Source of the DNA: Pseudomonas aeruginosa PAO1
GTDB taxonomy: Bacteria; Pseudomonadota; Gammaproteobacteria; Pseudomonadales; Pseudomonadaceae
Assembly (NCBI RefSeq): GCF_000006765.1
Contig: NC_002516.2
DNA length: 64,000 nucleotides
Direction: 5' to 3' (one strand)
Part shown: positions 8,131-11,849 of the stretch, in pieces
How the letters are laid out: each line of letters starts with the position of its first letter
Position numbering within the stretch: position 1 is the first letter of the stretch
Translations under genes and position numbers: made by a program
The notes under the pieces: model-generated
The model's input: the letters and a program-made list of their open reading frames with translations, nothing else
Database searches by the model: none
What the model was told of the DNA's origin: nothing

Positions 8131-9477
8131 ATGCGTAACCCCGAACGATCCGCCCTGCTGAAGGTGAGCGGGCTGCTGGGCAGCACCGTCGTCGCCATGG
8201 GGCTTGGCCTCTCCAGCGCCTGCGCGCAGAAGAATCCGACAGTCGAATACAACCAGCCTGCCGCTCCCCTGCAGACCAAGGCGCCCTTCTCCGGCGCCGG
8301 CCCGGCCGCCTCGGTGCCCGCTGGCGCGCCGAACGAGGCCCAGCCTGGGCAAAGCTTCGAACAGTGGCGCGACGCCTTCCGTCAACAGGCGCTGGCCGGT
8401 GGAATCGATGCGCAGACCTTCGATCGCGCCTTCGCCGGCGTCCAGCCCGATCCCGCCGTGGTCGAAGCAGACCGCAGCCAGCCGGAATTCACCCGACCGG
8501 TATGGAAGTACCTGGAAGGCGCCCTCGATCCGCTGCGCGTTCGCCAGGGCCAGGCGCGCCTGGCGCAGCATGCGCGCATCCTCGGCGAAGTCGACGCGCG
8601 CTATGCGGTGGATGCGGATGCGGTGGTGGCGATCTGGGGCATGGAGAGCAACTACGGTTCGCACATGGGCAACAAGAACGTGATCCGCTCCCTGGCGACC
8701 CTCGCCTATGAAGGACGCCGCCCGGAATTCGCCCACGCCCAGTTGCTCGCCGCCCTGAAGATTCTCCAGCACGGCGACGTTCCGGCCTCCTTCATGATCG
8801 GCTCCTGGGCCGGCGCCATGGGCCAGACCCAGTTCATCCCGACCACCCACAACCAGTATGCCGTGGACTTCGACGGCGACGGCAAGCGTGACATCTGGGG
8901 CTCGCCCGGCGACGCCCTGGCCTCCACCGCCAACTACCTGAAAGCCTCCGGCTGGATCGCCGGACAACCCTGGGGTTTCGAAGTCCGCCTGCCGGCAGGC
9001 TTCGACTATTCCCTGGCGGAACTCACCATCCGCAAGCCCCTGGGCGAATGGCAAGGGATGGGCGTACAAGGCGTCAACGGCGGCCCCCTGCCCTCCGGAC
9101 TCTCCGGCGAACAGGCCTCGCTGCTGCTGCCGGCCGGGCACCGCGGCCCGGCCTTCCTGGTGCTGCACAACTTCCGCGCCATCCTCAAGTACAACAACTC
9201 CAGCGCCTACGCCCTGGCCGTCGGCCTGCTCGCCGACAGCTTCAAGGGCGGCGGCCGGATAGTCGGCGCCTGGCCGCTGGAGGATGTTCCGCTGAGCCGC
9301 TCGCAGCGCATCGAGCTGCAACGGCAACTGGCCGCCCGCGGACACGATCCGGGCGCGGTGGATGGCATCATCGGCGCCAATACGCGCAAGGCGATCCGCG
9401 CCTGCCAGCAGGAGTTCGGCTGGCCGGCGGACGGCTATCCGACCCCGGCGCTGCTCGACCGCCTGCGGACGCCATAG
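8131..9477 (+). CDS. sltB3: Lytic murein transglycosylase, MltB/SltB family, with C-terminal PG-binding domain (SltB3)
   Basis: AIWGMESNYG catalytic Glu, GSWAGAMGQTQF, EF-hand DFDGDGKRD and C-terminal DGIIGANT. Confidence 0.88.
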   Translation: MRNPERSALLKVSGLLGSTVVAMGLGLSSACAQKNPTVEYNQPAAPLQTKAPFSGAGPAASVPAGAPNEAQPGQSFEQWRDAFRQQALAGGIDAQTFDRAFAGVQPDPAVVEADRSQPEFTRPVWKYLEGALDPLRVRQGQARLAQHARILGEVDARYAVDADAVVAIWGMESNYGSHMGNKNVIRSLATLAYEGRRPEFAHAQLLAALKILQHGDVPASFMIGSWAGAMGQTQFIPTTHNQYAVDFDGDGKRDIWGSPGDALASTANYLKASGWIAGQPWGFEVRLPAGFDYSLAELTIRKPLGEWQGMGVQGVNGGPLPSGLSGEQASLLLPAGHRGPAFLVLHNFRAILKYNNSSAYALAVGLLADSFKGGGRIVGAWPLEDVPLSRSQRIELQRQLAARGHDPGAVDGIIGANTRKAIRACQQEFGWPADGYPTPALLDRLRTP

Positions 9478-9536
9478 GGCCGCCGGCGGAGCTTACGACC
9501 CCACGTCCGCCGCGACCGCTCGCGGCACACCGGTTC

Positions 9537-9543
9537 GTAGGGC
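9537..9543 (+). repeat. Left part (GTAGGGC) of the REP interrupted by the IS
   Basis: Joins to 10916-10941 to give GTAGGGCGGATAACGCCATGGGCGTTATCCGCC. Confidence 0.8.
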
Positions 9544-9549
9544 AATGAA

Positions 9550-9562
9550 ATGGACTCCTCCC
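9550..9562 (+). repeat. Left sub-terminal inverted repeat of the IS
   Basis: ATGGACTCCTCCC is the exact reverse complement of 10899-10911. Confidence 0.95.
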
Positions 9563-9622
9563 TCCTACGGCGTCAAGCGCCAGACTAATGGTGCAGCCAC
9601 AAGTCCCGGAGGGGGAGTCAGC

Positions 9623-10639
9623 ATGAACCTTAGTCGCATTGGTCTGGATCTGGCAAAACAAGTATTCCAGGTGCACGGCGTTGATCGTCACGAGCATGTG
9701 GTATGTCGTCGCCAACTCAAGCGGGCACAGGTGCGGGATTTCTTTCGCCAACTGCCGCCGTGCCTGGTGGCGATGGAGGCCTGCGGCAGTGCGCACTACT
9801 GGGCGCGCGAGTTGCGGGAGCTGGGCCACACGGTACGCCTGATCGCACCGCAGTTCGTAAAACCCTACGTCAAGGGTGACAAGCACGATGCACACGACGC
9901 CGAGGCGATCTGCGAAGCCGCCAGTCGTCCGAGCATGCGCTATGTCCCGGTGAAGAGCGCAGAGCAGCAGGCCGTGCAGTCGATGCATCGGGTGCGCAGT
10001 CGTCTAGTGCGGGCCCGCACGGCGTTGTGCAATGAGGTGCGTGGCTTGCTGGGTGAGTTCGGGCTGATCGCGACTCGACGTGGGCGAGCGGCGACGATGG
10101 CCTTGCTCGAAACGGTCATGGCTACCGAGCCGGCGCCCTTGCCGGCCCCGATGGGCGAGCTGTTGCGTGAATTGAAAGATGAATTGCAGACGCTGGAGGC
10201 GCGCATCGCTCGACTGGAGCGACAGATTCAGGCTCACGTACGTGGCGATGCCCGCATCCAGCGCCTGCTGGCGGTGGAAGGCATCGGCCCGATCAGCGCC
10301 AGCGCGGTGGCGGCATCCGCCGGTGATGCACGGCAATTCCGCACGGGCCGCCAGTTTGCGGCCTGGCTGGGCCTGGTGCCACGGCAGCACTCCACGGGCG
10401 GGCAGCAGCGCTTGGGCAACATCAGCAAGCGCGGCGATACCTACTTGCGGACCTTGCTCATCCATGGCGCCCGTGCAGTCGTGCGCTGTTGCGCCAACAA
10501 GACCGATGCCCGCAGCCGCTGGCTGCAAGGTCTGCTGCAACGGCGTCCTGCCAATGTCGTCGCCGTTGCCCTGGCCAACAAGAATGCCCGGATCCTTTGG
10601 GCTTTACTCAGCCGGGAGACATGCTACCGGCCCGGTTGA
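9623..10639 (+). CDS. IS110-family DEDD transposase/recombinase (338 aa)
   Basis: RuvC-like IGLDLAK (D), AMEACG (E), KHDAHDA (DD), plus C-terminal GLVPRQHSTGG carrying the conserved Ser; RBS GGAGGGGGAG upstream. Confidence 0.96.
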   Translation: MNLSRIGLDLAKQVFQVHGVDRHEHVVCRRQLKRAQVRDFFRQLPPCLVAMEACGSAHYWARELRELGHTVRLIAPQFVKPYVKGDKHDAHDAEAICEAASRPSMRYVPVKSAEQQAVQSMHRVRSRLVRARTALCNEVRGLLGEFGLIATRRGRAATMALLETVMATEPAPLPAPMGELLRELKDELQTLEARIARLERQIQAHVRGDARIQRLLAVEGIGPISASAVAASAGDARQFRTGRQFAAWLGLVPRQHSTGGQQRLGNISKRGDTYLRTLLIHGARAVVRCCANKTDARSRWLQGLLQRRPANVVAVALANKNARILWALLSRETCYRPG

Positions 10640-10717
10640 GCGTTCCTGCCACACCGTAGTTGAAACATCCACCACGATTGCTCAGTGAATGACAATGATG
10701 ACGAACCGGTCGAACCG

Positions 10718-10856
10718 GCCTGCATGAAACCTGGTTTATACGTGGGCTCCCTGCTGCAGTGAAGCAAAGCCGTTAGGGCGATCAGGTATGCAGGCGCGCA
10801 TTTCATCAGGGCTCGGGAGTTGCAACACCACTCCATGAAGCCGGATATACGGATGC
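10718..10856 (+). ncRNA. Predicted bridge/seek guide RNA core of the IS (target-binding and donor-binding hairpins); true ends unknown
   Basis: Two tandem stem / internal-loop / GGCT:AGCC-stem structures whose loops match the target REP and the IS circle junction. Confidence 0.75.
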
Positions 10857-10898
10857 AGTCGTACACAGGTTTGAAATCAAGACAAACACTGGCAAACC

Positions 10899-10911
10899 GG
10901 GAGGAGTCCAT
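10899..10911 (-). repeat. Right sub-terminal inverted repeat of the IS
   Basis: GGGAGGAGTCCAT is the exact reverse complement of 9550-9562. Confidence 0.95.
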
Positions 10912-10915
10912 ATAC

Positions 10916-10941
10916 GGATAACGCCATGGGCGTTATCCGCC
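10916..10941 (+). repeat. Right part of the interrupted REP palindrome
   Basis: GGATAACGCC-ATG-GGCGTTATCC palindrome typical of Pseudomonas GTAG-family REPs. Confidence 0.85.
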
Positions 10942-10958
10942 GCTGCGGCGTCCAGGAC

Positions 10959-11849
10959 CTAGTCATCCGCGCAGAACCGCAGGATAGCGTCCGCCACCTG
11001 GGTGGCCGCCTCGCGCTGCGGAAAATGGCCGACGCCCTCCAGCACCAGCCGCTGGTAACGCCCGCTGAAGTAGTGCTCGCGTCCGCGGGAGCCGTCGGGG
11101 TGGGTGCAGGCATCCGCGCCGCCGTGCAGCACCAGGGTCGGCAGCGCCAGGCGCGGTGCCGGGAGCAAGCGCTGTTCCGCCGCCCCGTAGCGCGGCTTCC
11201 CCGCGACGAAGCCCCAGCGATGCCGGTAATAGTGCAGCACCACGGCCACCCAGTCCGGCCCGGAGAAGGCCTGGGCGGCCTCCTGGAAATCGCGCTCGGC
11301 ATACCATCCCGGCGGCGACCAGGTGTCCCACATCTGCCGGGCGAACGCCTCGCCCTCCTCGCGCAGCGCGCGCTCTCCGCGTGGCGTAGCCATGAACCAC
11401 TGGTACCAGAAGCTACGGGCCTGCGGCAGGGAAAGAACTTGCTGCGGATCGTTGCTGGCGTACCCCACCGAGAGCATCACCAGGTGCGAGGCTACGCCCT
11501 CGCGCAGTCCGCAGGCACTAGCCACCGCGCGAGCCCCCCAGTCATGGCCGACCAGCAGGGGACGTTGCAATGCCAGGCTGTCGACGAATGCCAGCAGATC
11601 GCAAGCCAGAGCCGCCAGTTGCCCGCTGCGCGGAGTAGACGCATCGCGGAAGCGGGTCGGGGCGAATCCCCGGAGGGCTGGTGCCAGCACCCGATAGCCG
11701 GCGTCCGCCAGGGACTCCGCCAGGTCTTTCCAGGTATGCGGGCTGTCCGGCCAACCGTGCAACAAGACGGCGCTGCGCGCCCCCTGCGGATTCCACTCCA
11801 GGTAGGCGATATCCAGGACATCGGTGGAAACGAAGGCATAGCGGCTCAT
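10959..11849 (-). CDS. Alpha/beta hydrolase, epoxide hydrolase-like
   Basis: HGWPD, GHDWGA (Asp nucleophile) and GHFPQRE motifs. Confidence 0.88.
   Translation of the reverse strand: MSRYAFVSTDVLDIAYLEWNPQGARSAVLLHGWPDSPHTWKDLAESLADAGYRVLAPALRGFAPTRFRDASTPRSGQLAALACDLLAFVDSLALQRPLLVGHDWGARAVASACGLREGVASHLVMLSVGYASNDPQQVLSLPQARSFWYQWFMATPRGERALREEGEAFARQMWDTWSPPGWYAERDFQEAAQAFSGPDWVAVVLHYYRHRWGFVAGKPRYGAAEQRLLPAPRLALPTLVLHGGADACTHPDGSRGREHYFSGRYQRLVLEGVGHFPQREAATQVADAILRFCADD

What the first reader, a model, noticed from the sequence alone, without database searches (positions are those of the whole stretch)
10798..10856. Second hairpin whose loop matches the IS circle junction (donor-binding loop)
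Seen: GCAT:ATGC closing stem, the same inner GGCT:AGCC stem (10810-13 / 10839-42) and an apical GGAGT:ACTCC stem. The 5' side CATTTCAT (10799-10806) is the reverse complement of the left end ATGAAATG (9545-9552). The 3' side ATATAC (10845-10850) is identical to the right end (10910-10915). Guide order is the same as in the target hairpin: reverse complement of the right half first, copy of the left half second. Inference: a two-loop RNA bridges donor and target for a single recombinase family.
Basis: partly seen in the sequence, partly recalled or inferred. Interest (0 to 1): 0.82.

Follow-up and report, generated by a model that had tools for sequence, protein, structure and literature searches.

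The report
ISPa11 bridge RNA donor-binding loop

Summary
All coordinates and sequence matches in the finding are correct. The element at 9544-10915 is ISPa11, an IS1111-group member of the IS110 family. Its transposase is 100% identical to the published ISPa11 protein. An uninterrupted site and six identical copies fix its ends and its REP target, GTAGGGC|GNATAAC.

In this single sequence the loop/end matches are only moderately improbable (about 0.0007 jointly). The folding energy is no better than shuffled sequence.

The decisive evidence is comparative. In 37 distinct relatives (48-80% protein identity), the two bases 5' of an invariant CAT in the loop are the complement of left-end positions +5/+6. 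The 3' side copies the four bases after the right inverted repeat, including four rare variants in separate lineages. The neighbouring hairpin tracks the target flanks in the same way.

The two-loop bridging model is therefore supported. It is also already published: a 172-nt, two-hairpin RNA co-purifies with the ISPa11 transposase, and donor guides for ISPa11 were predicted in 2024.

Caveats:
- The GCAT:ATGC closing stem is not conserved.
- The top-strand guide does not pair with the crossover base.
- In the related ISEc11, the first hairpin alone supported transposition.

The parts
9544..10915 (+). ISPa11 (IS1111 group of the IS110 family), 1372 bp. The boundary is ambiguous by one base: the C at 9543 and the C at 10915 are the shared crossover base.
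   Evidence: Empty site in CP109682. Six identical copies at different REP sites.
9544..9549 (+). Left-end extension AATGAA, outside the inverted repeat. It is the right half of the donor (circle) junction. Positions +5/+6 (9548-9549) are the ones that vary among relatives.
9550..9562 (+). Left subterminal inverted repeat, ATGGACTCCTCCC.
9623..10639 (+). Transposase/recombinase gene, 338 aa, with DEDD_Tnp_IS110 and Transposase_20 domains. 100% identical to the published ISPa11 transposase.
10678..10849 (+). Span of the published 172-nt long seekRNA that co-purifies with the ISPa11 transposase (39-210 nt after the stop codon), converted to window coordinates.
   Evidence: Legend of Extended Data Fig. 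6b in bioRxiv 10.1101/2024.04.26.591405. The conversion to window coordinates is mine.
10720..10793 (+). Hairpin 1, the target-binding loop. Basal stem CTGCAT/ATGCAG plus ACCTG/CAGGT; inner stem GGCT 10745-48 / AGCC 10768-71.
   Evidence: It lies within the published short seekRNA.
10736..10742 (+). Top-strand target guide TTATACG. It pairs with target C|GNATAA, with its only mismatch at the target's variable +2 position.
   Evidence: Family test: 31 of 49 against 7.7 expected.
10774..10781 (+). Bottom-strand target guide TAGGGCGA, a copy of target positions -6 to +2.
   Evidence: Family test: 37 of 49 against 4.8 expected.
10798..10856 (+). Hairpin 2, the donor-binding loop (the finding). Inner stem 10810-13/10839-42; apical stem 10816-20/10830-34; closing stem 10798-801/10853-56, which is specific to ISPa11.
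10799..10806 (+). Top-strand donor guide CATTTCAT, which pairs with left-end ATGAAATG (9545-9552). The family-conserved part is 10800-10806. Bases 10802-10803 covary with LE +6/+5.
10845..10850 (+). Bottom-strand donor guide ATATAC, a copy of the last 6 nt of the right end (10910-10915). Bases 10847-10850 covary with the right-end extension.
10890..10895 (+). -35-like hexamer TGGCAA of the junction promoter. After a 17-nt spacer, the -10 hexamer TACAAT is created only when the right end (TAC, 10913-15) joins the left end (AAT, 9544-46).
   Evidence: TA(C/T)AAT in 42 of 47 distinct junctions of relatives. Junction promoters of IS1111 elements are reported in PMC11187229.
10899..10911 (+). Right subterminal inverted repeat, GGGAGGAGTCCAT.
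10912..10915 (+). Right-end extension ATAC, the left half of the donor junction. The last C is the crossover base.
10916..10938 (.). Right half of the REP target: palindrome GGATAACGCC-ATG-GGCGTTATCC.

Best explanation
Hairpin 2 (10798-10856) is the donor-binding loop of the ISPa11 bridge RNA, also called the long seekRNA. The RNA is made from the 3' non-coding region, probably as part of the transcript driven by the promoter formed at the circle junction, and is bound by the DEDD recombinase.

In the internal loop of hairpin 2, the 5' side (CAUUUCAU) base-pairs with the top strand of the left end, ATGAAATG. The 3' side (AUAUAC) base-pairs with the bottom strand of the right end, ATATAC. The joined ends of the excised circle are therefore read on both strands around the crossover C. 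The same two half-sites are present at the two junctions of the integrated copy.

Hairpin 1 reads the REP target GTAGGGC|GNATAAC in the same way, with the top-strand guide 5' and the bottom-strand guide 3'. One RNA thus brings donor and target into a recombinase tetramer for strand exchange.

Shown here: the sequence matches, their covariation with the ends and flanks in relatives, and the conserved hairpin shape. Taken from the literature: RNA binding to the ISPa11 transposase and the extent of that RNA. Inferred by analogy with IS621: actual RNA-DNA pairing in a synaptic complex and the strand-exchange chemistry.
For: - Identity of the element: transposase 100% identical to ISPa11; ends fixed by an empty site; six identical copies at REP sites.
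- 5' loop side: 37 distinct loop/end combinations from relatives. RNA -1 pairs with LE +5 in 37 of 37 while both vary (C/T against G/A). The dinucleotide is Watson-Crick in 25 and wobble in 7. Seven different complementary types occur: AA/TT, GA/TC, GG/CC, GT/AC, AC/GT, AT/AT, AG/CT. None of 100000 shuffles reached 25.
- 3' loop side: identical to the right-end extension in 32 of 37. The rare variants CTAT, ACTA, GTAC and AGAT are each matched, and ATAA is matched in L059.
- Phylogeny: co-changes occur in at least six clades of the transposase tree.
- Structure: inner stem 99.2% paired, with double-sided changes. All but two of 47 distinct relatives fold as a 4-bp inner stem (3 bp in L053) plus an apical stem of differing sequence (none in L055); L027 and L033 do not.
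- Hairpin 1: covaries with the target flanks.
- Published data: the 172-nt transposase-bound RNA spans 10678-10849 and has two hairpins with internal loops. Durrant et al. 2024 predicted LDG/RDG for ISPa11.
Against: - In the related IS1111 element ISEc11, the 82-nt short seekRNA (hairpin 1 only) supported transposition better than the long form, 42% against 15% (PMC11187229). A donor loop is therefore not essential in that assay.
- The mapped 3' end of the long ISPa11 RNA (10849) lies inside the ATATAC guide and upstream of the ATGC strand of the proposed closing stem.
- The closing stem is not conserved (40% paired).
- The top-strand guide does not pair with +1 or with the crossover C. An A faces the C in 16 of 19 C-type elements, unlike IS621, where all four guides cover the core.
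- Folding energy is not better than shuffles.
- No Rfam model exists to confirm membership.
Confidence: 0.85

Rival explanations
1. Hairpin 2 is only a precursor, scaffold or stability part of the long transcript. Donor ends are recognised by the protein through the subterminal inverted repeats, and by hairpin 1 through the flanking target halves. The loop/end matches are not used for pairing.
For: The ISEc11 short seekRNA alone suffices, and donor flanks matching the target are required for circle formation (PMC11187229). The short form is the more abundant one. The closing stem is not conserved.
Against: It cannot explain why both loop sides track the element's own variable end bases in at least six clades, while the stems covary independently.
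Confidence: 0.09
2. The complementarity serves RNA-RNA regulation, for example pairing of the loop with the left-end sequence in a transposase mRNA leader, rather than DNA recognition.
For: The 5' side is antisense to the left end. Antisense and sense small RNAs regulate the relative ISPpu9 (PMC12288879).
Against: The 3' side has the same sense as the right end, so it has no sense-transcript partner. The junction -10 hexamer overlaps 9544-46, so a junction transcript would start downstream of the paired left-end bases (inference). The layout mirrors the DNA-reading hairpin 1.
Confidence: 0.04
3. The matches are chance.
For: A 6-mer match alone has p about 0.28. A 10-nt match to this copy's left flank in the same region is demonstrably fortuitous.
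Against: The joint probability is about 0.0007 in the single sequence. No shuffle of relatives reaches the observed covariation.
Confidence: 0.01

Closest known systems
ISPa11 seekRNA / bridge RNA (Siddiquee et al. 2024, PMC11187229; Durrant et al. 2024, PMC11208160, Extended Data Fig. 10c)
   Same: It is the same element: identical transposase, the same REP target GTAGGG*CGaATAAC, and the same 3' non-coding region. The published long RNA (172 nt, two hairpins with internal loops) covers this hairpin, and donor guides were predicted for it.
   Different: Nothing differs in the sequence. I could not see which bases the published figure assigns as donor guides. The published experiments addressed the target matches in the short RNA, not the donor loop.
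IS621 bridge RNA (IS110 group; Durrant 2024; Hiraizumi 2024, PMC11208158)
   Same: One RNA with two internal loops. Each loop has one guide for the top strand and one for the bottom strand, on either side of the crossover. It is bound by a DEDD/Ser recombinase.
   Different: In IS621 the RNA is encoded 5' of the gene; here it is 3'. The guide order is reversed (top-strand guide 5'). The shared core here is one base (C or T), not CT. The ISPa11 top-strand donor guide skips the core. Part of each donor guide reads the first 2-3 nt of long subterminal inverted repeats, which IS621 lacks. Handshake guides could not be identified here.
ISEc11 seekRNA (IS1111 group)
   Same: A 3' non-coding RNA with a long two-hairpin form and a short one-hairpin form, the same guide order, and a junction promoter.
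   Different: It has a different target. Experimentally, the short form lacking the second hairpin sufficed for movement, which leaves the need for the donor loop open.

Membership tests
IS110 family, IS1111 group (ISPa11) | DEDD (RuvC-like) N-terminal domain plus the PF02371 C-terminal domain | tested here: met
   PF01548 E = 2e-16; PF02371 E = 9e-25; 338/338 identical to ISPa11 Tnp.
IS110 family, IS1111 group (ISPa11) | Subterminal inverted repeats with short extensions beyond them | tested here: met
   13-bp repeats at 9550-62 and 10899-911; extensions (C)AATGAA and ATA(C).
IS110 family, IS1111 group (ISPa11) | Long non-coding region downstream of the transposase gene | tested here: met
   276 nt from the stop codon (10639) to the right end (10915), against 79 nt upstream.
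IS110 family, IS1111 group (ISPa11) | Site-specific insertion in one orientation without target duplication | tested here: met
   Empty site against filled site. Six copies all in GTAGGGC|GNATAAC.
Bridge RNA / seekRNA | Target loop with guides for both strands of the target | tested here: met
Bridge RNA / seekRNA | Donor loop with guides for both strands of the joined ends | tested here: met
Bridge RNA / seekRNA | All four guides cover the shared core (the IS621 rule) | tested here: not met
   LTG, RTG and LDG cover the C. The top-strand donor guide has A opposite the C, and C opposite +1.
Bridge RNA / seekRNA | The RNA is transcribed and bound by the recombinase | not testable with these tools
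   Published for ISPa11: 96-nt and 172-nt RNAs co-purify with the transposase.
Bridge RNA / seekRNA | The donor loop is required for recombination | not testable with these tools
   Shown for IS621. In ISEc11 the short RNA sufficed.
Bridge RNA / seekRNA | Match to a curated RNA family model | tested here: inconclusive
   No Rfam 15 hit at E up to 1. I do not know whether Rfam holds such a family.

The most novel reading that the evidence does not exclude
In IS1111-group elements the donor loop may work differently from that of IS621. It reads only LE +2 to +8 and RE -6 to -1, including the outer 2-3 nt of each inverted repeat, and leaves the crossover base unread on the top strand. Its guide positions are squeezed by the junction promoter's -10 hexamer, TA(C/T)AAT. 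It may also be dispensable for movement from a flanked donor, as in ISEc11. It could then act at one particular step, such as capture of the circle junction or fidelity, with the 3' extension of the bottom-strand guides (ATATAC-GGAT here) possibly playing a handshake-like role.
Probability: 0.25. Interest if true: 0.45.

Novelty: already known. Interest (0 to 1): 0.22.

Why it matters
It shows that a careful reading of raw sequence can recover the two-loop logic of an RNA-guided recombinase. Nothing new is found about ISPa11 itself.

The family-wide covariation gives independent support for a functional donor loop in the IS1111 group. There, experiments so far have addressed only target recognition, and one experiment suggests the second hairpin is dispensable. 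The covarying positions (LE +5/+6 and the four bases after the right repeat) are the natural places to reprogram or test donor recognition.

Tried and rejected
- Rfam scan of 9400-11100: no hit.
- Thermodynamic support: z-scores of -0.6 to -0.9, uninformative.
- Plasmid search for further copies: found only the empty site, which was useful, and an unrelated IS110 gene.
- The 10-nt match ACGAACCGGT (10701-10) to the reverse complement of this copy's left flank: rejected as fortuitous, because the other five copies have unrelated sequence there.
- The MAFFT alignment and my anchored alignment could not align the apical stems, so I relied on per-sequence folds.
- Handshake guides: the bases after the donor bottom-strand guide mostly start with G, as do nearly all targets, so there is no usable variation. 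The bases after the top-strand guides do not complement the non-cognate left halves in ISPa11 (by eye).
- Searches for newer IS1111 donor-loop experiments found none in the library.

Full report
**1. What is there**

The region holds a 338-aa gene at 9623-10639 (+) with the two Pfam domains of IS110-family transposases. Its protein is identical at 338 of 338 residues to the ISPa11 transposase listed in the supplement of Siddiquee et al. 2024.

A P. aeruginosa record carries the uninterrupted site ...GTTCGTAGGGC|GGATAACGCC... between the same two neighbouring genes, a lytic murein transglycosylase and an alpha/beta hydrolase. The element is therefore 9544-10915, running from AATGAAATGG to CCATATAC, 1372 bp. 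One C could belong to either side.

The exact protein is encoded six times in one 6.26-Mb NCBI genome. All six copies are identical in DNA, and one of them is this locus. Their flanks give the target GTAGGGC|G(A/G/C)ATAAC within a REP palindrome. A 2026 review tabulates the same target for ISPa11 (GTAGGGCGaATAACCGC, insertion GG*CG).

The subterminal inverted repeats are ATGGACTCCTCCC (9550-62) and GGGAGGAGTCCAT (10899-911). They leave AATGAA and ATAC as the outer extensions.

**2. The observation**

Every base and coordinate in the finding is right.

- The 8-mer CATTTCAT is complementary to positions 2-9 of the element. That covers five bases of the extension and the first three of the repeat.
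- ATATAC is the last two bases of the right repeat plus the extension.
- In shuffles of the 259-nt non-coding region, an 8-mer match occurs in 2.5%, a 6-mer match in 28%, and both in the right order and spacing in about 0.07%.
- Caution is needed. The same region holds five matches of 6 nt or more to the junction. It also holds a 10-nt match to this copy's left flank that the other five copies show to be fortuitous.
- Folding energies are unremarkable.

**3. Comparative test**

A scan of one genome per species returned 80 loci encoding relatives at 48-80% identity. In 59 of them I located the inverted repeats. In 55 sequences (the window plus 54 of these loci) I located a hairpin at the same place. 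It has this fixed layout:

N N-CAT-YRN | GGCY - apical stem-loop - RGCC | GG-AT-(4 nt)-...

*5' side of the loop*
- CAT pairs with ATG at LE +2 to +4 and is invariant.
- The two bases before CAT face LE +5 and +6, which vary among relatives.
- Among 37 distinct combinations, RNA -1 pairs with LE +5 in all 37.
- The dinucleotide is fully Watson-Crick in 25, wobble-compatible in 7, and has one mismatch in 5.
- Seven different complementary pairs of dinucleotides occur.
- Shuffling ends among elements gives a mean of 6.3 and a maximum of 16.

*3' side of the loop*
- The four bases after AT equal the right-end extension in 32 of 37 (shuffled mean 14.2, maximum 26).
- The lineage-specific variants CTAT, ACTA, GTAC and AGAT are each matched, and ATAA is matched in L059.

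*Phylogeny and structure*
- On a transposase tree, the matched states fall in at least six separate clades, so shared ancestry does not explain the signal.
- The inner stem is paired in 99.2% of cells, with changes on both sides.
- The apical stem differs in sequence but forms in nearly every relative.

*Hairpin 1*
- The six bases two positions after its inner stem copy the left flank in 37 of 49 (shuffled mean 4.8).
- Its 5' side holds a stretch of at least 5 nt complementary to the right flank in 31 of 49 (shuffled mean 7.7).
- In ISPa11 these guides are TAGGGCGA (10774-81) and TTATACG (10736-42). The single mismatch of the latter falls on the target's variable +2 base.

**4. Mechanism**

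The best explanation is the published bridge-RNA model. One RNA from the 3' non-coding region carries a target loop (hairpin 1) and a donor loop (hairpin 2). Each loop pairs with the top strand on one side of the crossover and with the bottom strand on the other. The RNA is held by the recombinase.

What is shown here is the covariation and the conserved shape. RNA binding and RNA extent come from the literature. The ISPa11 transposase co-purifies with two RNAs:
- a 96-nt RNA, given as 86-161 nt after the stop codon, which contains hairpin 1 only;
- a 172-nt RNA, 39-210 nt after the stop codon (window 10678-10849), described as two hairpins with internal loops.

Pairing with DNA in a synaptic complex is inferred from IS621.

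Joining the ends also creates TGGCAA-17 nt-TACAAT, and the -10 hexamer TA(C/T)AAT is present in 42 of 47 distinct junctions of relatives. This fits the junction promoter known for this group. It also explains why most donor positions are frozen and variation is confined to LE +5/+6.

**5. Points against, or different from IS621**

- The closing stem GCAT:ATGC is not conserved (40% paired). Its 3' strand lies beyond the mapped 3' end of the long RNA.
- The top-strand donor guide does not pair with +1 or with the crossover base. An A faces the C in 16 of 19 C-type elements, and a G in three.
- The shared core is a single base.
- The guide order is the reverse of IS621, as Siddiquee et al. reported for IS1111 elements.
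- In ISEc11, the short RNA without the second hairpin moved a mini-element more efficiently than the long one. Whether the donor loop is needed in this group is therefore untested.
- I found no later paper in the library that addresses this.

**6. Comparison and novelty**

This is ISPa11 itself. Its RNA has been purified with the transposase, and Durrant et al. 2024 listed predicted LTG, RTG, LDG and RDG for ISPa11. I could not see which bases they assigned. The finding is a correct re-derivation of a known system. The family-wide covariation and the details in section 5 are modest additions.

**Verdict**

- Observation: confirmed.
- Interpretation: supported.
- Novelty: already known.
- Interest: low.

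Noticed in passing
window 10701-10710 (and 10711-10718) against 9529-9538: ACGAACCGGT in the non-coding region is the exact reverse complement of this copy's left flank, ACCGGTTCGT. The other five identical copies have unrelated sequence at that distance, so the match is fortuitous. The RNA segment is a family-conserved small hairpin (CCGG...CCGG) upstream of hairpin 1.
   Followed up: yes
window 10890-10915 joined to 9544-9549: Joining the ends creates a promoter-like site, TGGCAA-17 nt-TACAAT. The -10 hexamer TA(C/T)AAT spans the junction in 42 of 47 distinct junctions of relatives. The donor guide positions therefore overlap a -10 box.
   Followed up: partly
window 10845-10854 against 10910-10919: The 3' loop side matches the right end plus this copy's flank over 10 nt (ATATAC|GGAT). 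The other copies have GAAT or GCAT in the flank. Whether the bases after the guide act like handshake guides could not be decided, because the first base is G in nearly all elements and nearly all targets.
   Followed up: partly
L001, L012, L017, L025, L047 (junction bases): In these relatives the base before AATG at the left junction differs from the last base of the right end. The RNA guide agrees with the left-junction base. This would fit insertion into a target whose crossover base differs from the donor's, followed by segregation of a heteroduplex.
   Followed up: partly
window 10692-10698: ACAATGA, upstream of hairpin 1 but inside the published long RNA, is a 7-nt copy of the circle junction AC|AATGA. 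A TGATG-like motif is conserved there in relatives. Its significance is unknown.
   Followed up: no
L026: This relative has 1577 bp between its inverted repeats, against about 1360-1400 in the others. It has no recognisable hairpin 2 in the expected place, so its non-coding region is probably rearranged or interrupted.
   Followed up: no
window 10720-10725, 10788-10793, 10853-10858: ATGCAG occurs twice, once at the 3' base of each hairpin. CTGCAT (10720-25) could pair with either copy, so it could close hairpin 1 alone or both hairpins together. This was not examined in relatives.
   Followed up: no
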